In this document: positions 1 through 37,513 of the stretch, in pieces
Numbering within the stretch: the stretch's first letter is position 1
Layout: every line of letters begins with the position of its first letter
Made by a program: the position numbers and the translations under genes
Notes under the pieces: generated by a model
Told to the model about the DNA's origin: nothing
Seen by the model: the letters and a program-made list of their open reading frames with translations, nothing else
The model's database searches: none
NCBI GenBank assembly: GCA_009859145.1
Contig: VRVR01000027.1
Span: forward strand, 259,060-323,059
Length of the DNA: 64,000 bases
Source of the DNA: Andalucia godoyi And28
Lineage: Eukaryota; Protista; Jakobida
Direction of reading: 5' to 3'

Positions 1-154
1 TCACGTGACTACGTGGCTGGGCCGTGGGGAGCATGAAAACACCAGAATTCTTCGCTCTACCTCGAAACCTACAATTTGAAAATCACGTAACTGTCCTCTT
101 TGAGTTTGGTCATTGTTTCGCTTTTTTCTTGTTTGCGGACCTATCGTTGTTATC

Positions 155-3139: not shown

Positions 3140-3270
3140 ACACATGAGATGGCGCTTCGCACCTACACACACATCTTTCTCTATCGCTTCATTTTCCTGC
3201 ATTCTTTAGCGAGCGCTCTGACGGATTCTGGCGATATGGACACATGTGTTTCATCGATTTCCTTCAATTA

Positions 3271-4830: not shown

Positions 4831-5068
4831 TTGATTGTAAAAACAAGAAAAGATAGATAGATCTTAATTACCCAGACCGATAAATTTCCTTGTCAAAAAA
4901 GTGCGAAATGCGACAGCGCAACAGTTCTTTTGCACGTTGCATGAAGAGTTTCCAGGCGTCGCCGTTTGCCGACTGATCTTTGACGTTCGAATCTAGAATC
5001 AAATGACGCAGCTGTCTCCCGATCAATGGCACCTCCCAAGCCCGGTGAATTGCTGCAACCACCACTTA

Positions 5069-7505: not shown

Positions 7506-10500
7506 ATGTTTCAGCGATTATTTTTAACGTACAATGCTTTCAATAGCATCGAGAGTTCGTTGAGCGGCATTGATGCGGACATTCGAATCACTCCTTTACG
7601 GCAACAGTTGTCGGCAGTTCGGCAGTCTCTTGAACAATCCGTCCACGGTCGCAAGGCTGCTGTGGCATTTTTTGGAGAAACTGGTGCAGGAAAGAGTTGT
7701 CTCATCAATGCGTTGCTTGGCACTCCGCTTTGCCTGCCACCTGGTGCAGGGGAGTCTGGAACGCATGTGCCCGTCATTATCCAAAAGGATGATATGGTTG
7801 ATAAATACTCTGTCCGTCGAATTTTTTGGGATCCCAAGGAACTATTGGCGAATCTGTGGGAAGCTGCACGGAGTGCAAAGCTGGTATCAACAAAAGGTTG
7901 CGACCAAAAACTTACCACAACCGGTTTGTCCGATTCTTCTGAGAATTCAACAGCCGGTAATGATTCTCAAAGTTCAGATGTGTATGAAGATTGTTTGCCT
8001 ATGGCTGTTCCTCCGCAACTTCCTGTCCATGATTCTGCTATTTTGGAGGTTGCGGAACAAATATTTGGGAAAGCGACTCGTTTTGAAGACGACAAAAAGA
8101 AGAGATACAGGGAGGTCTTGCATTCTGTGAAACTCAATAGAGATTATCTTCAGAATCCTGAATATTTTGGCGATCCTCAAAGTGTTTTTGAATATATCCG
8201 CGATCATGTTGAGCGGAAAGCCAACACTGTCCATTCTATCCAGACGGACAAAGAGATTGAGAATTTCTTTTTGCGAAATGTTGTCATCAGAGGGCCATTC
8301 CCAGACGCAATGGTCCCTGACGGCATGGTGCTGATGGATATGCCCGGTCTCATGGACGGAGAATGGATGTCTCAGTTTGCTGTTGTGTCCGAACTGCACA
8401 GGTCTTCCAGAGCTGTATTGGTGGTCAAAAATGATACTCCAGGCAATCATCAAATGATCCAAGATTTATTTGCCTTGATATTTTCTCTCTGCTCTTCTTC
8501 ACATAATCTGAACCTGGTGAATAATTTCATCATAGCTATATCCCACAAGGGATGTAAGCCTCCTCAAGTTTCGCAGAAGTATGTGAAGGGGTACCTTGAA
8601 AACTTTGAAACTCAACGAATGAAAGCAAGCCCTGATTCAAACAGCTCGAAACCGACATTCGTTGCTGTCAACTCTGTGATGTGCCTGATTCACAAGAAAG
8701 GTGTTTCTCTAAAGCAGCCTGCGCTTCTGGAAATGTGGAATCTGGAAGCCGATGAATTCGATGACATTTTGCATAATGGCAAAACAACAGCTGTTGCGTA
8801 CATGGCCGACTTATGCGACATGTGTCAAAATTTGTTTTCCACAAATGTAGCCTCTAATTTGAGAGATTTGAAGAAACTTGTGTCATACTTGCGTGCGCAA
8901 TCAAGAGGTGATATTTATTCATCCGAGTTGTTTCGGATTGATTATGAGAAGCTCCGACTGTCTCTTGCTCGTTGTTTACTAAAAGGCCAACGTAGACTCG
9001 AAGACTACTGCAAAGAAACCAAAGACAGGGGACTTTTGCGTTTGGTCGCTCATGTTTCCAGATTCATGGAGGACGCGGAAGACGTTGATGAGACCATCTT
9101 AGTTCTCGCACGGCGTATATTTGTTGGATCTGATGCTCGCCCCCAAATATGGTGGTTTAAGTTTGTTTCATTTGCTTCACAAATTGCAAGGGAAGCATAT
9201 GATGATTGTCTCATTGCTGTCGAGAAGTTTGCTTCACACGCCGATGGACTAAGTGGTGTGCGCCCCGATGACTTTTTGGGATGGCATTGGACTCTTCGTT
9301 TGGAACTAGATCTTCTCTTCAATGGCGTTGCGTCAAGGGCCTCCGCACAGTTAGAAAATTCTGTAGAGATTCTGATGGATTCTATCCGAACTAGAACAGG
9401 AGATATTATTTTGCGAACAAACTCCATTTCTGCACAAGAGTCTGATTCTACTGAAGAAGCTGCAGTAGAAGAACAACAGGTTGTTCAGTTTCAGAATTTT
9501 GTGAAATCTCTGTCAGAAAACTTTTTTTCCGTGCAGAAGTTGGTGAATCTCTTTGATGACCTTCCGAAAAATCCGACATTGTGGACGAAGCGACCTAAAT
9601 CAATTTCAAGCACTATCTTTGATGAAATCACGAATGTTCTGGAATGTTTGGACTCACAGAGCACTTTCAGCGGTCAAGGCTTGATTGGTGACCTGACAGC
9701 TGCACTTCAGCAGTATCGCGAAAGGCTCAAGCAGTTGATGTTTCCACAAAAATGGTCTGCTGGCTCTGAGCCTGGAATCTTCCTAGCAAAATTACTTTCT
9801 GACCCTGCCAAATGTTCTCTTGCGTTAATTTGCAAGAAGCTCGGGGTGTTTTTTGCGCCGTATATGTTTGGCCATTTTGTGGACGAACGATCGTGCCCGA
9901 AGAATGAGCGCCTTGAGAATGCAATGATTGATTATTTCAGGAAGTCGGGTTGGGACGCAACAACTGTACTAAGGGATTTGCACTCGACAGATGACAACGA
10001 TTGCAGGTACACCTGGACTTGGTTTGATTTCCTTATCTCAATTCGTGATCAACTCCATGTTTGCGGATTTTTATTGGATCATGTTGAAGCAACGACGGAA
10101 TTCAAATTTTACCTCAAGCTATCTAGCGACGATGTGTTGGTGGCAGTGCACGATCGACTCTTGTCGCTGTGGCGTCGAAGGATGAACGGATTCACGTGCT
10201 CTCCCCCACCGCTTTGTTTAGTGAAGGAATCTTCATCTTTTGCTTTTGAAAGTGTAGAAGCTTCTGGAATGTCCTTCTGCGCAAATGCGTGTGTTGGAAG
10301 CACATCGAACACTTTGGGTGGCTTCATTTCCGCCGGTGGTCGTGTTTTTGGCGTTCTTTGTGGTCATCTTTTTCTGGACATCAAGGATGTTGTGCGAGTA
10401 GAATGTTGTAAGGTTCCTCTTTTTCCTGATGATGTTGTAAGTCCTACTTCTCAAATCCTTCCCTTATCTGCTGTGGTTATTGACAAGTTTGAGCTCACGG

Positions 10501-11303
10501 ATAGATTTTCTGGAAAGAAAAAAACGTGGACCGGAAAGAGTGATTCTGAATATCTTGATTTTGGAAATCAGATACCGCCACCGACTTCTTCCAAGATGTG
10601 CGTTGTTGCTGGTTCACATTATTGCCTCACAATCCCATCTTTTGTATCATTTTGTCGACAAGGTCGCGCTTCTCTGACGAAGAAAAACAAAACTTTTCCT
10701 CCCCAGCTCATTTCTCGTCCCACTGGAAATGATTTGGCCATTTTTGAAATCTCGGATGTTGACAAAAGCTTGTTGTTCAACTCGGGCAAATTGACTCCTC
10801 TTCTGATGCCCATCGGGACAGAATTGGAAACTTCTACTATTCGGTGGCCTTTTTCTCAGTTTTTTATCCAAGATCCTCTTTTATCCATTTGTGATTTTCT
10901 CACTCAAGCCAGGCGACTTCAGTGTCGATTTGAGTGTTCAAAATTTGGGCTGTCGAGCGGATGGACTGTTGGTTTTCTGGATTCTGTTGCCCCCGTTGGA
11001 AGTTCTCCTCAAGGGTATAATTTTCCGTCGCTTTTGAAGATCAGAGCAGACGTTTCTGGTTCATGTTGCGGTCGGGTATTGTCAGGACCAGGAGATTGTG
11101 GTGCATTATGGATAGTTACAAGAGTGGTATGTCCAAGCATCGTTTCTCAACAAATATCTGATTATGCGCGGTCTTTAGTGAATGTGATAATTGGGGTTCA
11201 CATTTCTGGAGGAACTGAATTGGATTCTTCTGTATTTGCGCGGGCTCTTCCGTCTGAAATATTTATTTCCCAACTCTTTAACTCCGTTGGCAATCTGCAG
11301 TAA
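7506..11303 (+). CDS. Dynamin-like P-loop GTPase fused to a C-terminal trypsin-fold (NAL1/Ssy5-like) protease with Cys nucleophile
   Basis: G1 GETGAGKS (aa 57-64) with LINALLG, and G3 DMPG (aa 278-281). Protease motifs TLGGFI..VLCGHLF (H954), NDLAIFEI (D1076), CSKFGLSSGWTVG and SGPGDCGALW (C1198, TGT at 11097-11099). Confidence 0.8.
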   Translation: MFQRLFLTYNAFNSIESSLSGIDADIRITPLRQQLSAVRQSLEQSVHGRKAAVAFFGETGAGKSCLINALLGTPLCLPPGAGESGTHVPVIIQKDDMVDKYSVRRIFWDPKELLANLWEAARSAKLVSTKGCDQKLTTTGLSDSSENSTAGNDSQSSDVYEDCLPMAVPPQLPVHDSAILEVAEQIFGKATRFEDDKKKRYREVLHSVKLNRDYLQNPEYFGDPQSVFEYIRDHVERKANTVHSIQTDKEIENFFLRNVVIRGPFPDAMVPDGMVLMDMPGLMDGEWMSQFAVVSELHRSSRAVLVVKNDTPGNHQMIQDLFALIFSLCSSSHNLNLVNNFIIAISHKGCKPPQVSQKYVKGYLENFETQRMKASPDSNSSKPTFVAVNSVMCLIHKKGVSLKQPALLEMWNLEADEFDDILHNGKTTAVAYMADLCDMCQNLFSTNVASNLRDLKKLVSYLRAQSRGDIYSSELFRIDYEKLRLSLARCLLKGQRRLEDYCKETKDRGLLRLVAHVSRFMEDAEDVDETILVLARRIFVGSDARPQIWWFKFVSFASQIAREAYDDCLIAVEKFASHADGLSGVRPDDFLGWHWTLRLELDLLFNGVASRASAQLENSVEILMDSIRTRTGDIILRTNSISAQESDSTEEAAVEEQQVVQFQNFVKSLSENFFSVQKLVNLFDDLPKNPTLWTKRPKSISSTIFDEITNVLECLDSQSTFSGQGLIGDLTAALQQYRERLKQLMFPQKWSAGSEPGIFLAKLLSDPAKCSLALICKKLGVFFAPYMFGHFVDERSCPKNERLENAMIDYFRKSGWDATTVLRDLHSTDDNDCRYTWTWFDFLISIRDQLHVCGFLLDHVEATTEFKFYLKLSSDDVLVAVHDRLLSLWRRRMNGFTCSPPPLCLVKESSSFAFESVEASGMSFCANACVGSTSNTLGGFISAGGRVFGVLCGHLFLDIKDVVRVECCKVPLFPDDVVSPTSQILPLSAVVIDKFELTDRFSGKKKTWTGKSDSEYLDFGNQIPPPTSSKMCVVAGSHYCLTIPSFVSFCRQGRASLTKKNKTFPPQLISRPTGNDLAIFEISDVDKSLLFNSGKLTPLLMPIGTELETSTIRWPFSQFFIQDPLLSICDFLTQARRLQCRFECSKFGLSSGWTVGFLDSVAPVGSSPQGYNFPSLLKIRADVSGSCCGRVLSGPGDCGALWIVTRVVCPSIVSQQISDYARSLVNVIIGVHISGGTELDSSVFARALPSEIFISQLFNSVGNLQ

Positions 11304-13993: not shown

Positions 13994-14231
13994 TAAGTGG
14001 TGGTTGCAGCAATTCACCGGGCTTGGGAGGTGCCATTGATCGGGAGACAGCTGCGTCATTTGATTCTAGATTCGAACGTCAAAGATCAGTCGGCAAACGG
14101 CGACGCCTGGAAACTCTTCATGCAACGTGCAAAAGAACTGTTGCGCTGTCGCATTTCGCACTTTTTTGACAAGGAAATTTATCGGTCTGGGTAATTAAGA
14201 TCTATCTATCTTTTCTTGTTTTTACAATCAA

Positions 14232-15791: not shown

Positions 15792-15922
15792 TAATTGAAG
15801 GAAATCGATGAAACACATGTGTCCATATCGCCAGAATCCGTCAGAGCGCTCGCTAAAGAATGCAGGAAAATGAAGCGATAGAGAAAGATGTGTGTGTAGG
15901 TGCGAAGCGCCATCTCATGTGT

Positions 15923-18907: not shown

Positions 18908-19244
18908 GATAACAACGATAGGTCCGCAAACAAGAAAAAAGCGAAACAATGACCAAACTCAAAGAGGACAGTTACGTGATTTTCAAATTGTAGGTTTCGA
19001 GGTAGAGCGAAGAATTCTGGTGTTTTCATGCTCCCCACGGCCCAGCCACGTAGTCACGTGAGACTGTCGTTGCAAAAATCGGTTTTTCCCCGCCTTTTTT
19101 TTGAGGAGTGCACAGCATCCAGCATCAACTATTGATTTTATACAGTGCAGCGACCGAAATTCACCAAAACAACAATTTCCAGAAGTTGATTGCTGCCTCA
19201 GCTTTGTTTTTCTGTTCAACATCTTCTTCTTTTTCTCACGGCAA

Positions 19245-20248: not shown

Positions 20249-23200
20249 CTACAGGACTTCTTGCGTTTCGCTGCATAACACGCAAACTCCAGCTTGCTCA
20301 AGGCAGCGATTGAGATCGCGAGACGTTGCATGGGTATCTGGATGATCTGGTCCAAGAACTTGTTCTCGATTGCGTAGAACGTCTCGATATCCTAATAATG
20401 CGGCATCGTAATCCTCTTTGAGCATGCGACACCGGGCAATGCTGTGTCGCGTAGTCAACGTCATCGGATGCAAATCACCCAAAAGTCGCTGCTGTGAATC
20501 CACAACAGACGAAAACTCCTCTAGGGCGTCCTCATACTTGCCTTGATCCATTAGGCAATACGCAATTCCATGACACATCTCATACGTATCAGGATGATCT
20601 GTTCCCAGCAGCCGCTGTCGATCATGTAAAACCGCTTTGTATTCCGATATCGCTGTATCCTTATGTAGTAACATAAGGCATTTTCCATAGTTGTAACGAA
20701 TATCGAGGGTAATTGCATCTTCAGGATCAAGGACTTGCTCCTGATCTTTGAGTAGGCATTCCAACAGCTTCAGTGGAACATCTAAGTCACTTTGAAGCAT
20801 GCGACACGAAGCAGTACTGTTCCGAATACGCAAAACTTCGGGATGCTGGACTCCGAGACGTTTCTCTTGAATATCCAACAAGGTTTCAAACTCCTGAAGT
20901 GCTATGTCGTATTCTCTGCTGAGTTTCAAACAATGGGCAACATCATACAGACAGGTGCACGTAAAAGGATGACTACTGCCGAAAGACTGTTCTGCAGCGA
21001 TGTGAACATCCTGAAATCGTGAGAGGGTCATCTTGTAGTTCCCTTGATCGCATACGGATGAAGCAACGTCCTTTCTTGACTCTAAAGTGTCGACATGTCC
21101 AGCGCCAAAAAGTTGGGTCTTGATAGCTGTCAATTCTTCAAGTGCTCAATCGCACTACCATATTTCCTTTGTGCTCGTAAACATGAAGCAATGTCATGCC
21201 GACGTGAAAGCGTCGCCGGATGCTCGGCACCCAGGACCTCCAATTCAGTTTCAAGAAGAGATTCCAACATCTCCAGCGTCGCATCATACTTGCTTTCGGA
21301 CTGCAATGTCAGAGCTAAGCTGTTCCGCGATCGCAGTGTGTCCAGGTGTCTCGAACCGAAAACCCCCTCTTGAACAGCAATCAACGATTCAAGCTGTTCT
21401 CGTGCAACATCGTAGTGTCCGAGGTCGCGATGACACAGAGCAATGTCATGCCGACGTGAAAGCGTCGCCGGATGCTCGGCACCCAGGACCTCCAATTCAG
21501 TTTCAAGAAGAGATTCCAACATCTCCAGCGCCGCATCATTCTTTCCGTCAAATTGCAATGTGTAGGCCAAATCTTCTCGCGAAAGTAGCGTGTCAGAATG
21601 AGTCACACCGAAAACCAGCTCCTGAACAACAATCAACGATTCAAGCTGTTCTCGTGCAACATCATACTCTTCGAGGTCGCGATGACACAGAGCAATGTCA
21701 TGCCGACGTGAAAGCGTCGCTGGATGCTCGGCACCCAGGACCTCCAATTCAGCCTCAAGAAGAGATTCCAACATCTCCAGCGCCGCATCATACTTGCTTT
21801 CGGACTGCAATGTCAGAGCTAAGCTGTTCCGCGATCGCAGTGTGTCCAGGTGTCTCGAACCGAAAACCCCCTCTTGAACAGCAATCAACGATTCAAGCTG
21901 TTCTCGTGCAACACCGTAGTGTCCGAGGCTGCGATGACAAGCAGCAATGTTGCTTCGACATGTGAGAGTAATTGGGTGCTCAGCACCCAGAACCTCGATT
22001 ACAATCTCAAGAAGAGATTCCAACATCTTCAGCGCTGCATCATACTTGCCTTCAGACTGCAATATCAGAGCCAAGTCGATGCGCGATCGCAGTGTGTCCA
22101 GGTGTCTCGAACCGAAAACCCCCTCTTGAACAGCAATCAACGATTCAAGCTGTTCTCGTGCAACATCGTAGTGTCCGAGGCTGCGATGACAAACAGCAAT
22201 GTTGCTTCGACATGCGAGTGTCACTGCACGATCAGCACCCAGAACCTCGATTACAATCTCAAGAAGAGATTCCAACATCTCCAGCGCCGCATCATACTTG
22301 CCTTCGGACTGCAATATCAGAGCCAACTCGATCCGCGATCGCAGGGTTCTAGGGTGTTTAATGCCAAGCATCTTCTCTTGCATCGAAACAACATATTTGA
22401 ATTGTTCAATAGCTTCCGAATGCTTTCCAATAAAATGAAAACATTGTGCAATGTTAGCCCGCACTTCCAGCGTCTTCAAGTCTTCCTCGCCGAAACTCTC
22501 GATGTTCATTTTCAAAACGGATTGAAACATTGAAAGTGCGTCTTCGCACTTTCCTTGATGAAGAAGACATAAACCCAGATTGTTCCTTATAGAATCAACT
22601 GTGACATTCTGGTTTGTTCCTGTCAATGACCGCTCCAACACACCACTCAGGAGCGGAACGACAGGTTTCAGCTGACCAAGATCAGACAAACAGCTTGCGA
22701 CTTTGCATACAAGATTTGTGCCCAGACCTTCCTTCAAAAGCGACGACACGCATTCCAAAGGGAATAATCTGACAACACACGCACTGTGATTTCCACGACG
22801 AAGGCCAGATACTAAGTGACAACAATGTTCAAAATAGTCGGGCGTATTATTTCCAAACATTTCTTCAAAAATAAGCAGAGTATGTTCCCGGGACGAAGCT
22901 AGCCGTCTCGCATCACTCGGAGACGTGTATATGGCAAGATGTGGACGGCAACTAGTTCGAATGGCATTGGCCACGTGAAACGCGGTCGGCCTACGCGGGA
23001 AATCGCGAGACAGAATTCGCTCCATTACTCGTAACCACACACAATCAACGAATTCTAAAAGGTTCTCAGAAATCCCTGAACATCGAAATGAATCTTGCCA
23101 TTTCTCAAAAGAACTCGAAGAGTCGTCATCCAAACGAGCATTCTGAGGATGAAGCAACCACGACAAAACCAATCCTAGAGAAAAAACATCGGATGCGGTA

Positions 23201-24723
23201 GTGGATTTTTCATATCGTTGTTGTTCCGGACTGTTCCATCCTGGCGTTCCCAACACAGGCTTCGCAGTCTTCTCAACTTGAGCAAGGCCAAAATCACACA
23301 GGCACACATGCATCGAACGGATGGCATCGACACACTTGGAATCGCAAATTTCAACGATACCCTTCTCGATGTTTTCATGAATCCATAATTCATGAGACAC
23401 AAGCACGTTTTCTGGTTTCAAGTCAAGATGCATGTACTCCAGAGAGTGCATGTATCCAACAGCAGAAGCAATCTGAGAAGCCACATGACGACAAACAAGT
23501 AACATCTCGCGCGGTGATGACATCCATCGCGTCGACCAGTCTGTGGATGAAATGTAGTCCTTCAATGAACCATGATCAAAGTACTCTGTAAACACTGCTC
23601 CGTCGTGAGCAAAAACAATTGGTGCAATATGCGAATGACCATCTAAAGCACTCCATGTAGTTTCTTCCACGTGCTGAACATCAGGATGGCATGACACCTT
23701 ACAGGCAAACATTTTTTTCTGTGATCCGAGAAGCACGCGATACACCGCCCCGCATCCACCTACCCCGATGCAGTCCAAGACTTCCATGAGCGACTGCCCG
23801 TCAGAATGACGACAGAGCGTTTGCATCAGATTCTCCATCTTCTCGTGTGCATACATCAACGGCAAACGAGTGCGGATGGAGAGCTCCAAGAAAGAAACTC
23901 GGCCCTTCGCACACGAATTCCAGGTCCAACTTAGCAACACCACACAGCAACAAGCACTGACATCTGTGCAATAGGCGTATACAGGTGGTACGCTTTTCTG
24001 CTTGGAAATCTGCAACTCCAAACAGTAAAGCTGTGGCGTATTGGTAGTAGTACAAGATGCACAATCCGAAATTACTGTTCGGAAATCGTCATGAGATCCA
24101 ACACCGTGAAGAGAAAACTTTCCAAAACATGCAGAAGCTTCCATAGAGCGATCCACTGATTTGCGATTAAATCCGTTGACCGATAACGCATTGGACAATT
24201 GTAAGATTGTGGACTTTCCCATGCCGCCACGGCTCAGCAAGCCTTCCTCATCTGATTTACGGACACAATAGCACATCAAAGGTTTGTGCAGTCGTATTTC
24301 ATGATTCGCATCATATTTCCAATGACGCAGAGCAGTGCAAGAACTGAACGCAGACAAAGAAAGGTCTTTAAATTCTGAGTCCAAAACACACCATGGCTCT
24401 TCAATTCCGACAACCCCCCAAAATAATTTAGACGACCATTTCAGAATACTGTCCTTGATCTGAGAAACATCATCTGCGGATATTGCCTCTTGTCCTGAAA
24501 CCGAAATGCAAAACAGTCTCACCACAGGAGTCGTTTCATTTCCTGTCTCGTTCCGTGGCCAAAGCTTTGCCAGTCGTCGATCATCAGGTGTCAATTGCGT
24601 ATACAGTGTACATAAAATCGGATACACTCTTATAACTGCCGACGACCATGAACTCGGGATACCAAACGACAATTCCTTGAGTCGAAGTTGCGAAAGTGGA
24701 ATTTCCAGTGAATGGTCAAGCAT
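20249..24723 (-). CDS. Ser/Thr kinase with a large N-terminal extension and C-terminal 42-aa (kinesin-light-chain-type) TPR array; one gene split by a 1-nt frameshift at ~21131
   Basis: Kinase motifs GVGGCGAVY, FACK, HLDLKPENVL, DFGLA, NSPEQ and SDVFSLG. Repeats of LG..H..TL.SR..+A continue seamlessly into ORF 20249-21133 if one T is restored (HLKN-LTAIKTQLFG). Confidence 0.88.
21180..22350 (-). repeat. Near-identical 252-bp coding tandem repeats (pairs of 42-aa TPRs), about 4.5 units
   Basis: GCAATGTCATGCCGACGTGAAAGCGTCGC recurs at 252-bp spacing (about 21187, 21439, 21691), with diverged units further on. Confidence 0.9.
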
Positions 24724-24833
24724 TGCAGGGTCGTTGAACAGGATTAACAGGAAAACTCATCGCGGAAAAGAATTCCGCACCTCAGAAGCCGAGATCACCG
24801 GAAATTCAGAAAAGCGGTTTCGGATGACATGAC

Positions 24834-27800
24834 ATGTCAGCTCAAAAAGCAATGCCAGCCCGGGTCCCAAATTTCAAGTCTGCACCAGAAGTTCGCTTTT
24901 GCGTTTCTTTTCACCGTTTCTACGAATTCAAACGTTCCAATATGCTTCCAGTTCTGTTTGATCTTGAGAACACTCTTATTGTTCCTACCAAAAATGAACG
25001 ATGGCTATCACTTTCTTCGTGTTGGATGACAAGTCCTGTTCTTGACGCCAAACAATTGCTAAATCTGATTCACAAACATCTGGACAGTGATGAGTCGGTT
25101 GTCTTTTTAGGATTATGGAGTACTGCTCGCCAGGAGTCTTTGTTCACAGCTGATGATTTCGAGCGTAGAAAATGCCCAGAGATTCAGGAGCATCTTTCTC
25201 AATTCGACGAACTTCTTGTTCTCATTGTTCCTGACTATGTCCGTCCATTTGTGGATAATGTCATTCTTCATCGCAACATTGTGGAATTAGGTTTGCGCGG
25301 AGTTAATCCAGTGAATCCAGATTCACGGACGAGGTATCACGACAAGTACTCAATGTTATCCAAGGAAAACACTCAATCCTTGGGGTGGGCATCAAAGTCG
25401 TTGCTGCATGAATGTCAAGCGAGCGTTTCTGAAATCGCTTGTGATTGGATGTTCCAGTTTGAACAAATCAATTTGTGGAGGTTTGATCGCTGTCTCTCTT
25501 TACTGGGAGACGATGATTCTAGTAATGCAATCTCAAAGGTGTTAAAAGAGGATTTGAACGTCCACATTCAAATTTCCCCTTCGTATACGACTTTGAACAG
25601 GCCATCACTTTTTGGATTTCTTTTTTCGCCGCTAAGCGCGTTTGGACCAGATTCTGCCCAGGAGCCAGTATTCGGCGCAACTTTCGATAATGAAGGCAAG
25701 AAATTTGTTGTTGGATGTTTTTTACATCACGAGGGTTGCGAAGACTCTGAAATTGGCACGTTCGGCAATTTACACCCTTTTGAGAACTCTTCGCTTGAAT
25801 TTCATTTTACAAATGGTGCATTGCGGGTGCGTGGGTTGACAATTGCAGAGATTATTGTTGATGAAAATACCAACCATGTGGCACCAACCAACCAGCGTAC
25901 GTTCTGTCTGCACCATGTACAAATTGAAGTCGACGGAACCATGGTTCTCTGGTTTCGCTGGGGCTCACGGATTCTTCTGTGTCTATCTTTGAGACACATA
26001 GAGGGCGAATTGAAGGAAGTGAGATACAGTCTGTGGACTCTTGATAGTGATACAGGTCAGCGCAACGTCTCACTTGGTTGTGCATCTGTTACATGGTCGT
26101 CGCAGAAAGGTTTTGCGATACTTCCTTCCGACTATTTTAGTCTCCGAAACGGAGTTTCTGTCAGCCTTACGGATGTTCGTCGTTTCCCCGACTTCCAGGT
26201 TGTGTCTGCTGGAATCCGAATGTGTCTCGGGAGCCATTCATCATATGAATGTATGCATGGTTCACAGTCTTTTACGTCTTTGGCCAACTGCGACTGCGGT
26301 GAGATATTATTGTTTGAGCGATCTTCTCATGCGTGCATTGCGAACTTTATCGGACGCATTCGATCTGGTCGCTTGGTGTCCGACGAAGACTGTCGTGAAT
26401 TATGGATGGAACACAACGCTACAATGGAGGGTCGTTTTGTGGACGAGCTTCCGTCAGGAATCATGAAATTGACAATCTGCGGAAATGTGGAATACGCTAC
26501 CTATCGCAACGGCCGCATCGTGGAAGAAATCATATCATTGAGCGAGCGATATGCTGCCTTTATCCAGCAGTTGCGGGATCTGTTCTCGACCGATGAGATC
26601 TTTCTAGATGAGAATGAGAGCTCTCTTTTGATGGTTCTTCATGGTGGCCTGCCAGTGTGCTTGTTTTGTGTTCGGTGTGTGATAGGGAGCGGTGCTGAAG
26701 CAGTTGTGTATCGAGGTCTCACCCTGCACCACGGTCCCGTTGCTGTGAAGATCTTCCGTCGGTCCATCGGCGATGGAACCGAAGAGGCAAAAACTCAACA
26801 ATTCTTTTCTGACCAAATGGACCATTTGGGAGAGGAAGAGTTATTTGGCCGTATTCCTCGGCAGTCGACTGGCCAGTTTCCTAGTTTGGTTCGAGTCTTG
26901 TACATTGGAGCTGTAGATTCCGGAAGGAGTGTCGGAAGTGTTTTGCAGCAAGAGAGCGCTCTTGTTATGTCTTATTATCCTGAAGGAGATGTATTCGGAA
27001 AGAATCGACGGATTCAGGAGAATCTGTCGCCCAGATTATTGTTTCACCAGCTGAATCTCCTTGCCAGCACTGTCGCTGCACTTCATGAGGCACAGTTAAT
27101 TCATCGCGATATCAAGCCGAGCAACATCTTGTTGAATAACAATGGATCGAGCGGTTCTTACTCCTTTTGTCTCACAGATTTTGGAATTTCTTCCGTTCGT
27201 TTGGAGGCGCAAACGTACGTCGATTCCAGTGCAAATCCGAACTATCCACTTGGATCTCCTTGGTGGCGACCTCCCGAATTCGTGCACCAACCAGCGTTGC
27301 GGACGCCCCGTTCGGATGTCTTCAGTCTCGGATGGACTATGTTGTACCTCGCGCAAGTACAACGAATGGGTATGACCAGCGAGTATTTGCAGCATGCCTG
27401 TCAAGTTTCTTCAGCCTTGAATTCTGATCTATTCTCTTCTGGGGACGAGAATGAGTACTTTACTTATTCGGAAATGGTAAATAGAGACTTGCAGTCGTTG
27501 CGGGATGGTCATATTCAGACTCACTTGCGAACAGATGTTCATTCGACGACGACGTCCCGCATCTTGTTTTCCCATCTTCTGAGTCGAATGGTAGCATATG
27601 ATTACACTGACCGTTTGAAAATGAAAGGTGTTGTGATGCATCCTTTCTTTTGGAGCGCAAGCCAGTGTGTACAATTTGTTGTTGACGTTGCTCAGCCGTT
27701 AGCAGATTTGTTTCGAGAAGTTCAAGGCATTGAAGGCTTACATTACCAGAATTTCGAACATGCGCACAGTTCCTTTGCGTTGAATCACTTTTTGAGGCAC

Positions 27801-28286
27801 ACCGTGTCACCGTCTTCCATGCTTCCTTTTTCGTCGCCAGGTCAGCGATCATCACCAGATTCTATGATGTTAGAATCAATGTTGGATGTCATTTCGTTTG
27901 AACAGGCGTTAATGGAATACTGTGTCCATCCCAAGAACAATTATTCCGTGTACAAGCGCCTGTGCCAGCATGGACGGATGTGTGTCTTTTTCGTTTTACG
28001 TTTCATCCGTAACTTAGCATGCCATACCCCGCTGCTATCACGAGTTTTCCGTCAAGATGCGTGTCATCGATATGAGAGTCACACTCTTGTGTATCTTTTA
28101 CTTAGCCAGAGTGGAAAGAATGGAGACCTATTCGGTCGTATTGTTGAAATTGTCAGTGAACTGTCGATGATCTTGTTGGAAAACGAGAGTCAGTTGACAT
28201 TGACAGATCGTCAGATCTTTAAATCTCTTCAAGCTTGCGGATTTCTTCCAAAATCTGATCCCGACGAATTTCTCGAGCATCGTTGA
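24834..28286 (+). CDS. Protein kinase with C-terminal KEN endoribonuclease domain (RNase L/IRE1-like) and ~600-aa unknown N-terminus
   Basis: Kinase motifs GSGAEAVVY, VAVK, HRDIKPSNIL, TDFGIS, RPPE and SDVFSLG, then HPFFWS (kinase-KEN junction) and LRFIRNLACH, which matches the KEN catalytic R-x2-R-N-x3-H. Confidence 0.82.
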   Translation: MSAQKAMPARVPNFKSAPEVRFCVSFHRFYEFKRSNMLPVLFDLENTLIVPTKNERWLSLSSCWMTSPVLDAKQLLNLIHKHLDSDESVVFLGLWSTARQESLFTADDFERRKCPEIQEHLSQFDELLVLIVPDYVRPFVDNVILHRNIVELGLRGVNPVNPDSRTRYHDKYSMLSKENTQSLGWASKSLLHECQASVSEIACDWMFQFEQINLWRFDRCLSLLGDDDSSNAISKVLKEDLNVHIQISPSYTTLNRPSLFGFLFSPLSAFGPDSAQEPVFGATFDNEGKKFVVGCFLHHEGCEDSEIGTFGNLHPFENSSLEFHFTNGALRVRGLTIAEIIVDENTNHVAPTNQRTFCLHHVQIEVDGTMVLWFRWGSRILLCLSLRHIEGELKEVRYSLWTLDSDTGQRNVSLGCASVTWSSQKGFAILPSDYFSLRNGVSVSLTDVRRFPDFQVVSAGIRMCLGSHSSYECMHGSQSFTSLANCDCGEILLFERSSHACIANFIGRIRSGRLVSDEDCRELWMEHNATMEGRFVDELPSGIMKLTICGNVEYATYRNGRIVEEIISLSERYAAFIQQLRDLFSTDEIFLDENESSLLMVLHGGLPVCLFCVRCVIGSGAEAVVYRGLTLHHGPVAVKIFRRSIGDGTEEAKTQQFFSDQMDHLGEEELFGRIPRQSTGQFPSLVRVLYIGAVDSGRSVGSVLQQESALVMSYYPEGDVFGKNRRIQENLSPRLLFHQLNLLASTVAALHEAQLIHRDIKPSNILLNNNGSSGSYSFCLTDFGISSVRLEAQTYVDSSANPNYPLGSPWWRPPEFVHQPALRTPRSDVFSLGWTMLYLAQVQRMGMTSEYLQHACQVSSALNSDLFSSGDENEYFTYSEMVNRDLQSLRDGHIQTHLRTDVHSTTTSRILFSHLLSRMVAYDYTDRLKMKGVVMHPFFWSASQCVQFVVDVAQPLADLFREVQGIEGLHYQNFEHAHSSFALNHFLRHTVSPSSMLPFSSPGQRSSPDSMMLESMLDVISFEQALMEYCVHPKNNYSVYKRLCQHGRMCVFFVLRFIRNLACHTPLLSRVFRQDACHRYESHTLVYLLLSQSGKNGDLFGRIVEIVSELSMILLENESQLTLTDRQIFKSLQACGFLPKSDPDEFLEHR

Positions 28287-30043: not shown

Positions 30044-30558
30044 CAGGATTCTGCAGTTACTTTTCGAGAAGAAATAAGAGGGGAAAGAAGTTGGCAGACT
30101 CAGTGAGAAGAGAAAAAGAAGAAAAAAAAGAAAAAACAAGATGATGGAACAGCTTTATGATCTTCAGAACCTCGTTCAAATTCTTTTTCGTCGCCAAGTC
30201 TTCCGAGTCATGCGAATGCGAGCAGATCTCCGTTGCTCATCCTAATATGGAATGTGCAATGCATGCGAATCTTCTGCAAACGGAATCCTTCGGAGCACAG
30301 TTTGGAGTCGCTGTTACGACGGCTTTCATCGGTTACTGTAAAGACCCGGCCAACGTTCGTTCTCTGTTCTTTCGTTCGCTTTTTCATCATTCGAACATAA
30401 TCCTGCTTATAAATCACTCCAAAGTATTCCATCAAAGTCGTGTATCCTTGTGTTTCATCGAAGCTCGGCCTACAGAGGATTGCAGTGCATGGTCCAGACG
30501 ATGAGGTCGTACTTACAACTTCGAAGTTGCCCGCGTTGATTTCTTGAGGGCTGGACGA

Positions 30559-30700
30559 AGAGTCAAAGATCTCGTCTGTTTCATCGGATTCATGGTATTC
30601 TGTGAAGATGTATGTCATCGGTTCGAGAGCCACACTCTCATGTATCTCCTGCTCAGTCAATGTGGGAACAGCAGGGACGTCTTTGGTCGTGTTACTGTCA
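30559..30700 (+). pseudogene. Fragment of a paralogous KEN-domain C-terminus
   Basis: FCEDVCHRFESHTLMYLLLSQCGNSRDVFGRVT vs FRQDACHRYESHTLVYLLLSQSGKNGDLFGRIV (28047-28145): 21/33 aa identical. Preceded by VKDLVCFIG, a KEN-like V.DL+RFIR motif. Confidence 0.8.
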
Positions 30701-34541: not shown

Positions 34542-35564
34542 TTACATATTAAATTCAAGATGAGAAGCTGTCCATAATAAATTCGACAGTTGGGCGTACC
34601 CGGCTTCCACAATCCTCCACGCGAATATTACGTGAAGAATGAGGATTATGAAAAGAAGCGAGCACAGAGCATCGATGATGCAAAAGAAAACCTTGTGGCA
34701 GATCAAGTCTGCCTGTTCTGATTCCACGCATCGGTGTTTGCGGGACAGAACGCGGAAGGGTTGGCTCTTCACTGAAAAGAATGTCCCTTCCGCAAAGATG
34801 GAGACCACGAGTCGAAGATCCCGTTTCTCTCGAACAGTGGCGTGTTTGAAGCAGAAGTGATGAGAGCCATACAGCTCAATCAATCTGGTCCATGGATTGT
34901 AGCCAGTAGATAAAGGCATCGCGGAGAGGTTGCTACAAAACTCGCCAGTCTCAAAATCAACCAGTGATCCTGATTTAACATCCTCGAGAGTCAAGAAAGC
35001 GGTGACCGGGGAGGAGAACCACGGTGAGGCAATGAATACAGACACACGACCGTCCCTTCCTTCAAGCACTTCTCGCTTACTTCCCAGGACTGGAAGATAT
35101 CCAGCGCTGAGGTCAAAAGCAGATTCATGTTGCCATGAGACGCACACTGTCAATGGAACACCATTCACAGTATGTCCGAGCGTCTCACCCATCGCACCGC
35201 ATACAGACTGTGGCCAAGATGCAGCTGGGATACTTGACGTCGAGACGAGACGAGCAACATCATGCTCAGAAATCTGATCCGGTGTCCCGACAGATTCACA
35301 GTTTGTCGAAACTGCATCCACGGACAGGTCGCTCGTGACATCAGAATCACTGACGTCGTATCCAGTATCCACAGGCTCTGTCATCGAATGTGGTACCGTT
35401 GGATCAACATTGTCCAACCCCTGATTGGGGGTCTGCGTAACAGGAGCGTCTGCGGATACCTCCTTTTCTGCGAAAAGACTGCCAAAGCTGTCAAACAGAC
35501 CGGGGCTATCTATCGCATCATTCTCAAGGTTCCACAGCGGAAGTGAATAATCGTCGATCGTCAT
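34542..35564 (-). CDS. Hypothetical protein (~340 aa): acidic disordered N-terminus plus beta-rich C-terminal domain, possibly a transcription factor
   Basis: ATG (MTIDDYSL) after a pyrimidine tract. C-terminal LRLVVSIF....SVKSQPFRVLSRK resembles the last strands of Ig-fold/p53-like DNA-binding domains (weak). Confidence 0.55.
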   Translation of the reverse strand: MTIDDYSLPLWNLENDAIDSPGLFDSFGSLFAEKEVSADAPVTQTPNQGLDNVDPTVPHSMTEPVDTGYDVSDSDVTSDLSVDAVSTNCESVGTPDQISEHDVARLVSTSSIPAASWPQSVCGAMGETLGHTVNGVPLTVCVSWQHESAFDLSAGYLPVLGSKREVLEGRDGRVSVFIASPWFSSPVTAFLTLEDVKSGSLVDFETGEFCSNLSAMPLSTGYNPWTRLIELYGSHHFCFKHATVREKRDLRLVVSIFAEGTFFSVKSQPFRVLSRKHRCVESEQADLICHKVFFCIIDALCSLLFIILILHVIFAWRIVEAGYAQLSNLLWTASHLEFNM

Positions 35565-35761
35565 TGTTCGCGGGTTTAAATAGTAAAAACAGGAGAAAGG
35601 AGAAAATAAGAAGGGGGGAAAAAAAGAGAAGAAAAGAAAAAGGAAAGAATTTTTTTTTGGTTCTGGTTTTGTTTCTGCAGAACAAAAGAATGACACCAAT
35701 CCGTACCGGCCTACCAGGCGCATACCCCCCTGTTTTGACGGACAACAGGGTTTTCGCAGAG

Positions 35762-37513
35762 TCACAAACGGTGCGTCCGCACGTGCCTGTTCGAAATCGA
35801 CTGACTCACTTGAGGCGTTCCTCTCGCAAGACCTCGTTTTCCTCGAAATCTCAGTTGCAAGCGGTCCTCTGTAACGAAAGCGCGTATCATGGCCCCCAGT
35901 CCAAGAGCATCGTGGACAACAATATGAGCCACATTGTCTATGCTAGGATCGAGTCCTTGGGTATCTGGAGAAAATGCTCGGATCACTCTGCCAATAAGCT
36001 GGTCCAAAGGTGCTTGTGATGCGAACGGCCGACAGATGCCACAGATGGAGAGACTTTTCAAATCAAAGCCTTCTCCTAGGGTTCCCACGTGCACAACAGC
36101 GTCATATCCCCCTTCTCGGAAGTTTCGCAAGTCATTGGAAGATCTTAGTTGCATCGGGTAGCATGGAATATTTCTAGATCCGATTGCAATTGCTTTGAAT
36201 CGCTCATCGCCGTTCTCTGCATGAGAATTAAAGATTTCTTGAAGCTGGATTGCGTGTTGCAAATCCATGGCTTGCAGAATCGCCTGGTGGTGAATCGACG
36301 TCCCCGGTCTGTTCTTCTCTCTCAATAACTGCAGTACACGTTCCACGGTCCATTCCATGGTTGCTCGCGATCGTGCTACACTGTTTCGAACCCATTTCAA
36401 GTATCCTGCTCGTCGGACTTTTTCACAAGAGTTGAACACAATAGGTTTTTCACATGGCTTTGATGCAAGAAATATCAGCTCGGATACTTCGATGGTTTCC
36501 ACGACGAGTTGTTTCCAGGCCCTTTCTTCAAATGCTTGCTTTCGTGGACAGCGGTAAATGAGTGTCGCGTCCAACTGCGTTCCGTCTGCGCGATGCGGTG
36601 TTCCGGTCATGTACACGAGCCTTGCAGTGACGAAGTGCTTGCGGATCTGGCGATAAGTGCAAGAGGTGGCGTGGTGCGCTTCATCCACGATGATGAGATC
36701 GAAGTAGTCTCGCGGAAGCTGTTGAAGTGATCCTCTCGTATTCTGCAAGCGATGTCGTGTTGTAATTATGAAATCACAATCACGAAGTTGATTTAAACAA
36801 CTCGGGTCTGCAGCAACGACCTCCAGGCTTGCCAATTCACGCATGGTCTCTGGATTCCCGTTCGCGCTCACAATCACTCCAATCGAGGGATGTCGACTAT
36901 CCGTGGAAAGGACTCTAATGTTTCGGATGAAGCACTTCGCTGACTTCCATGCGGCATTCCTCACAGCTTCGCGAGCAATTTCTCGGTTTGGAGCGACGAA
37001 GAGCACTCGTCCATTCACCATACCGAACGGAAGAGTCATTGCGATCCCTGTTTTACCCATCCCCATTGGAAGGTGAATCAATGCTGGTTTGTTGCGCTCT
37101 GCGCGAATTCTTGTCTGCCTCTGCACTCCTCTCAGTTCCGTTTCGAGGCGATCATCTCTCTCCCTGTCGTTTTCCGCAAGCTTGTTTTTCAGAAGATGTT
37201 CCTTTTCCACGAAAGTTCGAATGACGTTCAGATCATCCTCGATCTTCAGCTGGTGAAAATGCAAATGAACTGCTGCAATTGCTTCTCGCTGTGCTCCTCG
37301 CAATTGCGTCTTGTCTATGCGCTGACTCCATACATCTGGGTATGGGGCGCGAATGCAAGACTGCGCATCTGGATCGGGAGTATGTCTGCGTTCTGATGCT
37401 TCCGGGTTTACGCTTCTTCCTATGCCTCCTGTCGTACGGAAGACTGGTGACTTCGGGCCGATCGCTGCAGGTTGGAGTTGACCACTGTTCTGTTGCGCAC
37501 CTATACCGTTCAT
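35762..37513 (-). CDS. Superfamily 2 DEAH helicase (ResIII/UvsW/A18-like)
   Basis: Motif I LPMGMGKT, Ia FVAPNREIA, II IVDEAHH, III MTGTP, V GTLGEGFD, VI QLIGRVIR. Confidence 0.9.
   Translation of the reverse strand: MNGIGAQQNSGQLQPAAIGPKSPVFRTTGGIGRSVNPEASERRHTPDPDAQSCIRAPYPDVWSQRIDKTQLRGAQREAIAAVHLHFHQLKIEDDLNVIRTFVEKEHLLKNKLAENDRERDDRLETELRGVQRQTRIRAERNKPALIHLPMGMGKTGIAMTLPFGMVNGRVLFVAPNREIAREAVRNAAWKSAKCFIRNIRVLSTDSRHPSIGVIVSANGNPETMRELASLEVVAADPSCLNQLRDCDFIITTRHRLQNTRGSLQQLPRDYFDLIIVDEAHHATSCTYRQIRKHFVTARLVYMTGTPHRADGTQLDATLIYRCPRKQAFEERAWKQLVVETIEVSELIFLASKPCEKPIVFNSCEKVRRAGYLKWVRNSVARSRATMEWTVERVLQLLREKNRPGTSIHHQAILQAMDLQHAIQLQEIFNSHAENGDERFKAIAIGSRNIPCYPMQLRSSNDLRNFREGGYDAVVHVGTLGEGFDLKSLSICGICRPFASQAPLDQLIGRVIRAFSPDTQGLDPSIDNVAHIVVHDALGLGAMIRAFVTEDRLQLRFRGKRGLARGTPQVSQSISNRHVRTHRL

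What the first reader, a model, noticed from the sequence alone, without database searches (positions are those of the whole stretch)
24834..28286. RNase L-like kinase-KEN protein with a novel ~600-aa N-terminal region
Seen: an apparently active kinase (HRDIKPSN, DFG), HPFFWS, and the KEN motif LRFIRNLACH (RNase L has LKFIRNLGEH). There is no signal peptide or obvious TM as in IRE1, and no ankyrin repeats as in RNase L. Known: KEN RNases are activated by dimerisation after ligand sensing. Inference: a cytosolic RNase switch with an undescribed sensor. It is divergently transcribed from the kinase-TPR gene across only ~110 bp, suggesting a co-regulated pair.
Basis: partly seen in the sequence, partly recalled or inferred. 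Interest (0 to 1): 0.75.

Follow-up and report, generated by a model that had tools for sequence, protein, structure and literature searches.

The report
Soluble IRE1-like kinase-RNase, orphan N-domain
This gene of the protist Andalucia godoyi encodes a soluble relative of the stress sensor IRE1 (an active-looking kinase followed by a very diverged RNase tail) joined to a 600-residue front part found nowhere else, and it belongs to a small species-specific gene family that the public annotation calls plain kinases.

Summary
ORF 24834..28286 (+) is intact at 1150 aa and carries HRDIKPSN, DFG, HPFFWS and LRFIRNLACH. It has no signal peptide, transmembrane segment or ankyrin repeats.

The window is Andalucia godoyi (jakobid) nuclear DNA. 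The public model ANDGO_07190 is cut short by a predicted 112-nt intron and lacks the whole C-terminal tail.

The kinase is specifically IRE1-type. The 16 best PDB sequences are all IRE1, about 6 orders of magnitude in E-value ahead of other kinases.

The tail is KEN-like but very diverged:
- Pfam PF06479 does not match.
- Only the first KEN helix and the R-N-x3-H catalytic motif are clearly conserved.
- An AlphaFold model superposes on IRE1 kinase-RNase structures over its full length, but the IRE1-rich alignment behind it biases that result.

The N-terminal ~600 aa are an orphan. An exhaustive search of 1.84 billion representative proteins found them only in three A. godoyi paralogues with the same architecture, all with R, N and H invariant.

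The best reading is a species-restricted family of cytosolic IRE1-derived kinase/RNase switches with an unknown sensor. "RNase L-like" is analogy, not membership. The 110-bp divergent spacer is normal for this compact genome and does not show co-regulation. I rate it a new variant of a known kind, of moderate interest.

The parts
24834..28286 (+). Complete ORF, 1150 aa plus TGA: orphan N-region, IRE1-type kinase and KEN-like tail (public model ANDGO_07190 covers aa 37-919 only)
24834..26633 (+). Orphan N-terminal region, aa 1-600. No Pfam or PDB match. Found only in A. godoyi paralogues. Best-conserved block is aa 460-600 (nt 26211-26633), which holds one MORN-like unit MEGRFVDELPSGIM at aa 531 (unverified)
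26679..27650 (+). Protein kinase domain, aa 616-939, IRE1-type. K639, HRDIKPSN 757-764, DFG 782-784 and WRPPE 811-815 are invariant in all four paralogues
27639..28253 (+). KEN-like (HEPN-type) tail, aa 936-~1140. It starts with the junction and helix 1, HPFFWSASQCVQFVVDV, and carries ~40-47 extra residues before the catalytic helix compared with canonical KEN
27996..28025 (+). Putative RNase catalytic motif LRFIRNLACH (R1059, N1060, H1064; an Rx4H HEPN motif), invariant in all four paralogues and aligned with the 100%-conserved R, N, H of 110 IRE1/RNase L sequences
27591..27702 (+). 112-nt GT..AG 'intron' of the public gene model. It removes HPFFWS, shifts the frame and ends the model at 27783. 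Probably a mis-prediction
24724..24833 (.). 110-bp spacer between the divergent start codons (218 bp if M37 of the public model is the true start)
   Evidence: PMC7050145
21130..24723 (-). Divergent neighbour: 1197-aa protein with a 310-aa unassigned N-part, a generic Pkinase (aa 314-585) and 8-9 TPR_12/TPR_10 repeats. No specific link to the finding has been shown
30556..30693 (+). Relic of a family member: 48 codons 52% identical to aa 1056-1103, with the RN..H motif lost

Best explanation
The gene encodes a cytosolic, IRE1-derived dual enzyme. It is one of at least four paralogues confined to Andalucia godoyi. Each has an orphan ~600-aa N-terminal region, then an IRE1-type protein kinase with a full catalytic motif set, then a strongly diverged KEN (HEPN-type, Rx4H) ribonuclease tail.

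Shown here: the architecture, the IRE1 affinity of the kinase, conservation of KEN helix 1, conservation of R-N-x3-H across paralogues down to 27% identity, the absence of membrane anchoring, and the species-restricted distribution.

Inferred by analogy with IRE1 and RNase L: an unknown signal acts on the N-terminal region and drives self-association. The kinase domains then bind nucleotide and trans-autophosphorylate their Ser/Thr-rich activation loop. Back-to-back dimerisation brings two KEN tails together, and metal-independent RNA cleavage follows using R1059, N1060 and H1064.

The expansion into paralogues, a decayed copy nearby and a surrounding region with mobile-element genes suggest a stress or conflict role (antiviral, anti-element) rather than the housekeeping unfolded-protein response. 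This last point is a suggestion only.
For: Kinase:
- Pfam Pkinase, 84 bits.
- With the single protein, the 16 best PDB sequences are all IRE1, E 3e-14 to 2e-11.
- With the family profile they are all IRE1 at E 3e-25 to 1.5e-21, against 1e-15 for the next kinases.
- The IRE1-like N-lobe start and G-loop are aligned.
- K639, HRDIKPxN and DFG are invariant in the paralogues.

KEN-like tail:
- HPFFWS plus helix 1 matches a KEN profile built from 98 database IRE1/RNase L sequences: 11.5-14.7 bits by HMM, and hhalign probability 93%, E 2.7e-7.
- The KEN body without the junction aligns in register (YK...LRxxRNxxxH...LF), with z=4.4 for the single sequence and z=3 for the family, both against shuffles.
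- R1059, N1060 and H1064 fall in the columns where 110 canonical sequences have R 100%, N 100% and H 100%.
- The extended motif is expected in 7e-5 of shuffles.
- Paralogue P0126 keeps further canonical residues (DAW, LG..D.F..Y) and bridges the family to canonical KEN.
- The AlphaFold2 model of aa 585-1150 has pTM 0.73, and pLDDT (10-residue block means) of 50-94 across the C-lobe and the all-helical tail.
- The 50 best Foldseek PDB matches are all IRE1 kinase-RNase chains, aligned over 513-562 columns, with TM 0.48-0.57 normalised to the target.
- The tail is as conserved between paralogues (46-70%) as the N-region (47-70%).
- The tail's reading frame has 0 stops against 12-14 in the other two frames.

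Soluble: no TM segment or signal peptide in any paralogue.

Orphan N-region:
- Exhaustive phmmer against 1.84e9 representatives gives 4 hits, all A. godoyi.
- Nothing in viral or metagenome contigs.
- Nothing in Pfam or the PDB.
Against: - Pfam PF06479 does not match this protein or its paralogues, even at E<=10.
- A family HMM of the KEN body scores real KEN bodies hardly better than shuffled decoys: 8% lie above the decoy 99th percentile.
- P0126 alone gives only z=1.3.
- Most other canonical KEN signature residues are replaced: the D of RDLL becomes F, the G of LG becomes C, the P of PD becomes Y, and FP becomes FG. The tyrosine equivalent to human Y892 is ambiguous.
- The structure model used an alignment dominated by IRE1/RNase L sequences, so its KEN-like fold is not independent evidence.
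- No coordinates were available to check the active-site geometry.
- The sensor role of the N-region, oligomerisation, kinase activity and RNase activity are all inferred and untested.
- I could not establish whether A. godoyi also has a canonical IRE1.
Confidence: 0.6

Rival explanations
1. The protein works only as a kinase. The C-terminal tail is a degenerate, non-catalytic remnant of a KEN domain (a pseudo-RNase or dimerisation helix bundle).
For: PF06479 fails to match. Body similarity to KEN is close to noise. Many canonical KEN residues are replaced and there is a ~40-47-aa insertion.
Against: R, N and H of the Rx4H motif are invariant across paralogues that share only ~26% identity in the tail. 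According to the HEPN survey (PMC3710099), these are the residues shown by mutagenesis to be needed for KEN catalysis. The tail is as conserved as the other domains.
Confidence: 0.2
2. The public gene model is right. A 112-nt intron (27591..27702) is spliced out, the frame shifts, and the protein is a 909-aa kinase with no KEN-like tail.
For: Model ANDGO_07190 exists and matches aa 37-919 and then diverges. The interval has GT..AG ends, and its size lies within the 55-756 nt range of A. godoyi introns (PMC7050145).
Against: The 'intron' removes the end of the kinase domain and HPFFWS. These residues are conserved in IRE1 and are read through in all three paralogue models. After it, the frame stays open for 232 codons, against 12-14 stops in the other frames, and that stretch is 46-70% identical to the paralogues. 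Most A. godoyi genes have no introns.
Confidence: 0.08
3. It is the ordinary ER-resident IRE1 orthologue of A. godoyi, with its sensor diverged beyond recognition.
For: The kinase is closest to IRE1. The source annotation names paralogue ANDGO_07409 'ppk4', which I recall as the fission-yeast Ire1 name. The N-region is predicted to be beta-rich, though at low confidence.
Against: None of the four paralogues has a signal peptide or a transmembrane segment between the N-region and the kinase. There is no Pfam match, and no sequence match to any PDB chain in the N-region, so no luminal domain is recognisable. There are four or more divergent copies rather than a single conserved gene.
Confidence: 0.03
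4. The gene forms a co-regulated two-gene module with the divergently transcribed TPR kinase. For example, the TPR protein might act as the sensor or scaffold and this protein as the effector.
For: The two genes sit head to head, 110 bp apart. Both are multidomain kinases with unassigned N-terminal parts.
Against: Close, oppositely oriented gene pairs are usual in this genome: 38 of 47 sampled close pairs, with spacers of 44-691 nt (PMC7050145). The TPR protein's kinase is generic and only 30% identical over 136 aa. The loci of the paralogues could not be fetched, so conservation of the pairing is untested.
Confidence: 0.12

Closest known systems
IRE1 / ERN1 (ER stress sensor kinase-endoribonuclease)
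   Same: The kinase domain is closest to IRE1. The HPFFW junction and first KEN helix are shared, as are the R-N-x3-H motif position and the kinase-then-RNase order. The full-length model superposes on IRE1 kinase-RNase structures.
   Different: There is no signal peptide, luminal domain or transmembrane segment. The KEN body is too diverged for PF06479 and carries a ~40-47-aa insertion. The gene is present as several divergent paralogues in one species.
RNase L (2-5A-dependent ribonuclease of vertebrates)
   Same: It is a soluble protein with the layout sensor domain, kinase-fold domain, KEN. The local motif LRFIRNLACH resembles RNase L's L[KR]FIRN[LM]GEH, and RNase L fragments were the best, though insignificant, canonical hits of the family tail HMM.
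   Different: There are no ankyrin repeats. Its kinase keeps all the catalytic motifs, whereas RNase L (from my own knowledge) is a pseudokinase. RNase L is not among the 60 best PDB matches, which IRE1 leads. The resemblance is one of design (an independent soluble offshoot of IRE1), not orthology.
Other KEN/HEPN architectures catalogued by Anantharaman et al. 2013 (PMC3710099)
   Same: It has the Rx4-6H HEPN-type RNase motif, and KEN there is recorded fused to a Ser/Thr/Tyr kinase. That survey also lists lineage-specific expansions of KEN.
   Different: The catalogued partners are ankyrin, CCCH, UBI and BRCT, and the recorded expansions are of kinase-less KEN in Oikopleura and monocots. No jakobid family with this N-terminal region is listed. 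Literature searches found no description of it.

Membership tests
Protein kinase superfamily (PF00069) | Match above Pfam's gathering score, plus the catalytic Lys, HRD..N and DFG | tested here: met
   84 bits against a cut-off of 31.7. K639, HRDIKPSN and DFG are present and invariant in the paralogues.
IRE1 (ERN) family | Kinase domain of the IRE1 subfamily | tested here: met
   The 16 best PDB sequences are all IRE1, with a gap of about 6 orders of magnitude in E-value to other kinases.
IRE1 (ERN) family | N-terminal signal peptide and luminal sensor domain | tested here: not met
   There is no hydrophobic N-terminus. There is no Pfam match and no sequence match to any PDB chain in the N-region.
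IRE1 (ERN) family | Single transmembrane segment between sensor and kinase | tested here: not met
   Kyte-Doolittle scan: the only candidate (aa 599-617) is kinase strand beta1, and the paralogues reach at most 1.46-1.57 in that scan.
IRE1 (ERN) family | Non-conventional splicing of HAC1/XBP1-type mRNA | not testable with these tools
   This needs experiments.
KEN domain (Pfam PF06479, Ribonuc_2-5A) | Match to the family HMM | tested here: not met
   No match at E<=10 for this protein's tail or its paralogues. My own KEN HMM gives 13-17 bits in two separate islands only.
KEN domain (Pfam PF06479, Ribonuc_2-5A) | Directly follows the kinase through HPFFW plus helix 1 | tested here: met
   hhalign probability 93%, E 2.7e-7 over 23 columns. 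The PDB alignments run through this junction.
KEN domain (Pfam PF06479, Ribonuc_2-5A) | Catalytic R, N and H (R-N-x3-H), with an upstream Tyr | tested here: inconclusive
   R1059, N1060 and H1064 are present, invariant and correctly aligned. The Tyr column holds H1046, although Y1040 lies nearby, and the alignment there is ambiguous.
KEN domain (Pfam PF06479, Ribonuc_2-5A) | All-helical KEN fold | tested here: inconclusive
   The model is all-helical and aligns to IRE1 over its full length. However, the alignment that fed the model was rich in IRE1 sequences.
RNase L | N-terminal ankyrin repeats that bind 2-5A | tested here: not met
   No ankyrin match in Pfam.
RNase L | Pseudokinase domain (catalytically inactive) | tested here: not met
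   The full set of catalytic motifs is present. That RNase L is a pseudokinase is from my own knowledge.
HEPN superfamily | Rx4-6H motif in an alpha-helical domain | tested here: met
   RNLACH is R-x4-H. The domain is predicted helical. The definition is from PMC3710099.
MORN repeat (considered for aa ~500-565) | Match to the Pfam MORN model, or several clear repeats | tested here: not met
   No Pfam match at E<=10. A loose pattern finds one unit per paralogue, which also occurs in 2-7% of shuffles.

The most novel reading that the evidence does not exclude
This would be a third functional class of kinase-KEN RNase switches, beside IRE1 and RNase L. It would have arisen independently in a jakobid by detaching the IRE1 kinase-RNase module from the ER membrane and joining it to a new, lineage-specific cytosolic sensor domain. 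It would then have expanded into paralogues that act in cell-autonomous defence or stress-induced RNA decay. That would be a protist counterpart of the vertebrate RNase L solution, with an unknown ligand.
Probability: 0.3. Interest if true: 0.75.

Novelty: new variant of a known kind. Interest (0 to 1): 0.55.

Why it matters
Only two ways of controlling a kinase-KEN nuclease are understood. In IRE1 an ER-luminal domain senses unfolded protein, and in RNase L ankyrin repeats bind 2-5A. This family offers a third input domain on the same output module, in a deep-branching eukaryote. If its RNase is active, it would show that the IRE1 module was released into the cytosol and rewired more than once. 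It would also supply a new sensor domain whose ligand can be sought, and it adds a candidate innate-defence or stress gene family to a protist lineage where almost none is known. On the practical side, the public annotation hides the family: the members are named as generic kinases and this one is truncated.

Tried and rejected
- **Pfam PF06479 on the tail and on the paralogues:** no match.
- **Word-indexed protein searches:** the full protein and an N+C family profile returned only the gene's own public model. That index did not even return the three paralogues, so it says little about absence.
- **Family tail HMM against real versus shuffled KEN bodies:** almost no separation.
- **P0126 alone against a KEN profile:** z=1.3.
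- **AlphaFold of the N-region with a 4-sequence alignment:** mean pLDDT 39. Foldseek against the PDB then gave nothing (E>=0.014, TM<=0.11), so no fold is assigned.
- **Sequence profiles of N-region pieces against the PDB:** only chance-level hits, E>=0.25.
- **MORN-repeat idea for aa 500-565, and a HAD-like reading of DLENT at aa 43-47:** neither is supported by Pfam. I keep both only as leads.
- **Foldseek of the kinase-tail model against viral structures:** only generic giant-virus kinases, TM (query-normalised) <=0.31.
- **Viral and metagenome contig scans for the N-region:** nothing.
- **Fetching the paralogue loci to test whether the TPR-kinase pairing is conserved:** those proteins are not on record.
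- **Literature searches** for A. godoyi IRE1 or non-canonical kinase-KEN proteins in protists: nothing specific.
- **ER-resident IRE1 reading:** rejected, because no TM segment or signal peptide is present.
- **Using MAFFT alignment A4:** rejected, because it put the family's RN..H out of register. I replaced it with A5, where the registers agree.
Full report
**Observation.** The window holds an uninterrupted ORF at 24834..28286 (+), 1150 codons ending in TGA.
- HRDIKPSN at aa 757-764
- DFG at aa 782-784
- HPFFWS at aa 936-941
- LRFIRNLACH at aa 1055-1064

It also has a G-loop (IGSGAEAVVY, aa 617-626) and VAVK (K639). Pfam finds one domain, Pkinase, at aa 616-939 (E 1.5e-23, 84 bits). It finds no ankyrin repeats and nothing at all in aa 1-600. 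The divergent neighbour, 21130..24723 (-), is a 1197-aa protein with a kinase domain and 8-9 TPR_12/TPR_10 repeats. The two start codons are 110 bp apart.

**Source and annotation.** The protein is 100% identical over aa 37-919 to EukProt ANDGO_07190, 'Serine/threonine-protein kinase cst-1', of Andalucia godoyi, a jakobid. After aa 919 the public model skips 112 nt (27591..27702, GT..AG), changes frame and stops after 26 more residues. I think this intron is a mis-prediction, for four reasons:
- It removes the end of the kinase domain and HPFFWS, which are conserved in IRE1 and read through in all three paralogue models.
- The ORF frame stays open for 232 codons beyond it, while the other two frames have 12 and 14 stops.
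- That stretch is 46-70% identical to the closer paralogues.
- Most A. godoyi genes lack introns (PMC7050145).

The size and ends of the interval do fit real introns of this organism, so only RNA data can settle it.

**Kinase.** With the single sequence, the 16 best distinct PDB sequences are all IRE1 kinase-endoribonucleases (E 3e-14 to 2e-11). The next kinases are at 1e-7. With a profile of the four family members, the same 16 reach E 3e-25 to 1.5e-21, against 1e-15 for the next group. RNase L is not among the 60 best. The alignments include the IRE1-specific start of the N-lobe and run through HPFFWS into the following helix. The catalytic Lys, HRD..N and DFG are invariant in all paralogues. 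So this is an IRE1-type kinase that looks catalytically competent.

PF06479 does not match this protein or any paralogue, even at E<=10. To look closer I fished 120 database KEN sequences. An HMM of 98 of these sequences hits the protein in two islands in the right order. One is HPFFWS plus helix 1 (aa 936-960, 11.5-14.7 bits). The other is LRFIRNLACH (about 0 bits). The islands are separated by roughly 40-47 more residues than in canonical KEN.

The profile-profile results are as follows:

| Test | Result |
|---|---|
| Junction, hhalign | probability 93%, E 2.7e-7 |
| Family body without junction | score 19.6; shuffles 12.9 +/- 2.2, max 20.3 |
| This protein's body alone | score 20.2; shuffles 11.9 +/- 1.9, z=4.4 |
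| P0126 body alone | z=1.3 |
| Family-body HMM on real KEN bodies vs shuffled decoys | 8% of real above the decoy 99th percentile |

The family-body alignment is in register: YK..., LRxxRNxxxH, LF.

In a 114-sequence alignment, R1059, N1060 and H1064 sit in the columns where canonical sequences have R, N and H at 100%. Most other signature residues are replaced. The extended motif arises in only 7e-5 of shuffles of the tail. The most divergent paralogue, P0126, keeps more canonical residues (DAW, LG..D.F..Y). It is also what brings the family into register with canonical KEN in MAFFT.

**Structure model of the kinase and tail.** An AlphaFold2 model of aa 585-1150 from that alignment has pTM 0.73 and mean pLDDT 68.6. 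The N-lobe is poor; block-mean pLDDT is 50-94 across the C-lobe and the all-helical tail. Its 50 best Foldseek matches in the PDB are all IRE1 kinase-RNase chains. They align over 513-562 columns, with TM 0.48-0.57 normalised to the target. Because the alignment was rich in IRE1 sequences, this shows consistency and is not independent proof.

My reading is that the tail descends from a KEN domain (about 0.8). It has kept the Rx4H catalytic core under selection but is otherwise remodelled.

**The N-terminal region.** No hydrophobic signal or transmembrane segment exists in this protein or its paralogues. The one hydrophobic 19-mer (aa 599-617) is kinase strand beta1. An exhaustive phmmer search with aa 1-600 against 1.84 billion representative proteins gave four hits, all from A. 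godoyi:

| Protein | Length | Identity | Notes |
|---|---|---|---|
| ANDGO_07190 | 909 aa | 100% | the gene's own public model |
| ANDGO_07774 | 970 aa | ~50% | |
| ANDGO_06880 | 688 aa | 73% | two identical EukProt entries |
| ANDGO_07409, 'ppk4' | 1144 aa | 27% | |

All have the same architecture: N-region, IRE1-type kinase, HPxFW, R-N-x3-H. Identity is similar across the domains. Scans of viral and metagenome contigs found no relatives. Pfam, PDB sequence profiles, and a low-confidence AlphaFold model (pLDDT 39) with Foldseek gave no assignment. The best-conserved block is aa 460-600, just before the kinase. It is rich in invariant Gly and aromatic residues and holds one MORN-like unit, which remains unverified.

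**Context.** The claim of co-regulation with the TPR kinase has no support beyond proximity. In A. godoyi, close pairs with 44-691-nt spacers, mostly in opposite orientation, are common (PMC7050145). The TPR protein's kinase is generic: its best PDB matches are SOBIR1, PERK and IRE1 at E 1e-10 to 1e-8. The two proteins share only 30% identity over 136 aa of kinase. I could not fetch the paralogue loci to test whether the pairing recurs.

A 48-codon relic of a family member, 52% identical to aa 1056-1103 and with the motif lost, lies 2.3 kb downstream at 30556..30693. The wider window looks like an accessory region. It holds a perfect 7237-nt inverted repeat, PLD-like and dynamin-like ORFs, a ResIII helicase, a serine recombinase and many ORFs with no Pfam match.

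**Mechanism.** These points are shown: a soluble protein; an IRE1-type kinase with all catalytic motifs; a KEN-derived tail with a conserved Rx4H; an orphan N-region; a paralogue family. The rest is inferred from IRE1 and RNase L. A signal acting on the N-region would cause self-association. The kinases would then bind nucleotide and trans-autophosphorylate the Ser/Thr-rich activation loop (aa 785-810). Back-to-back dimers would juxtapose the tails, and RNA would be cut without metal ions by R1059, N1060 and H1064. The paralogue expansion, the relic copy and the accessory-region setting hint at a stress or conflict role, but this is speculation.

**Comparison and novelty.** The protein works like IRE1 or RNase L but belongs fully to neither. 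It fails the IRE1 tests for signal peptide, luminal domain and TM segment. It fails the RNase L tests for ankyrin repeats and a pseudokinase. It fails the Pfam KEN model, while it meets the HEPN Rx4-6H criterion. The HEPN survey (PMC3710099) lists KEN fused to kinases with ankyrin, CCCH, UBI or BRCT, and kinase-less expansions in Oikopleura and monocots. It does not list this architecture, and literature searches found no description of it.

I class it as a new variant of a known kind, interest 0.55. It is a neat independent 'solubilisation' of the IRE1 module with an unknown sensor. However, it rests on one species, on a diverged RNase domain and on no functional data.

Noticed in passing
window 1-7237 and 11825-19061: A perfect (100% complementary) 7237-nt inverted repeat. 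Each arm carries a 1008-aa ORF, a PLD-like 519-aa ORF and two smaller ORFs. The arms flank a 4587-nt centre with a 1265-aa dynamin-like GTPase ORF (7506..11303). One arm starts at window position 1, so the repeat may extend further. It could be a recent duplication, a mobile element or an assembly artefact.
   Followed up: partly
window 42647-44026 (-): A 459-aa ORF with a strong serine-recombinase (Resolvase N-terminal) domain, E 1.2e-35. This is unusual for a eukaryotic nuclear locus. It suggests a mobile or virus-like element in a region where most ORFs have no Pfam match.
   Followed up: no
window 34542-37513 (-): A ResIII/DEAD helicase ORF (35762..37513, 583 aa) overlaps by 4 nt a 407-aa ORF with no Pfam match (34542..35765). 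They may be one gene split by a frameshift or a short intron.
   Followed up: no
window 20249-21133 (-): A 294-aa ORF made of further TPR_12/TPR_10 repeats abuts the stop of the TPR-kinase ORF (21130) in another frame. The TPR-kinase gene may therefore be longer and interrupted by a frameshift, an intron or a sequencing error. The long + strand ORFs at 21087-22533 are mirror images of these near-identical TPR repeats.
   Followed up: partly
window 30556-30693 (+): A 48-codon relic of a family member, 52% identical to aa 1056-1103, in which VKDLVC replaces the RNLACH motif. No other pieces of that copy were detected nearby.
   Followed up: partly
window 27591-27702 (+): The public model ANDGO_07190 splices out 112 nt here, which deletes HPFFWS and truncates the protein. 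The paralogue models ANDGO_07774 and ANDGO_06880 look N-terminally truncated as well: they begin at positions matching aa 174 and 463 of this protein.
   Followed up: partly
window 24960-24974 (aa 43-47) and 26424-26465 (aa 531-544): DLENT after a hydrophobic strand resembles HAD motif I (DxDxT); P0126 has DVDSD in the aligned position. MEGRFVDELPSGIM resembles a MORN unit, with half-units about 26 aa to either side. Neither reading is supported by Pfam, and both may be chance.
   Followed up: partly
paralogue P0125 (ANDGO_06880), not in the window: The same 688-aa sequence is listed under two EukProt accessions (P008784 and P008832). This suggests two identical gene copies, as would arise from a perfect repeat like the one in this window.
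   Followed up: no
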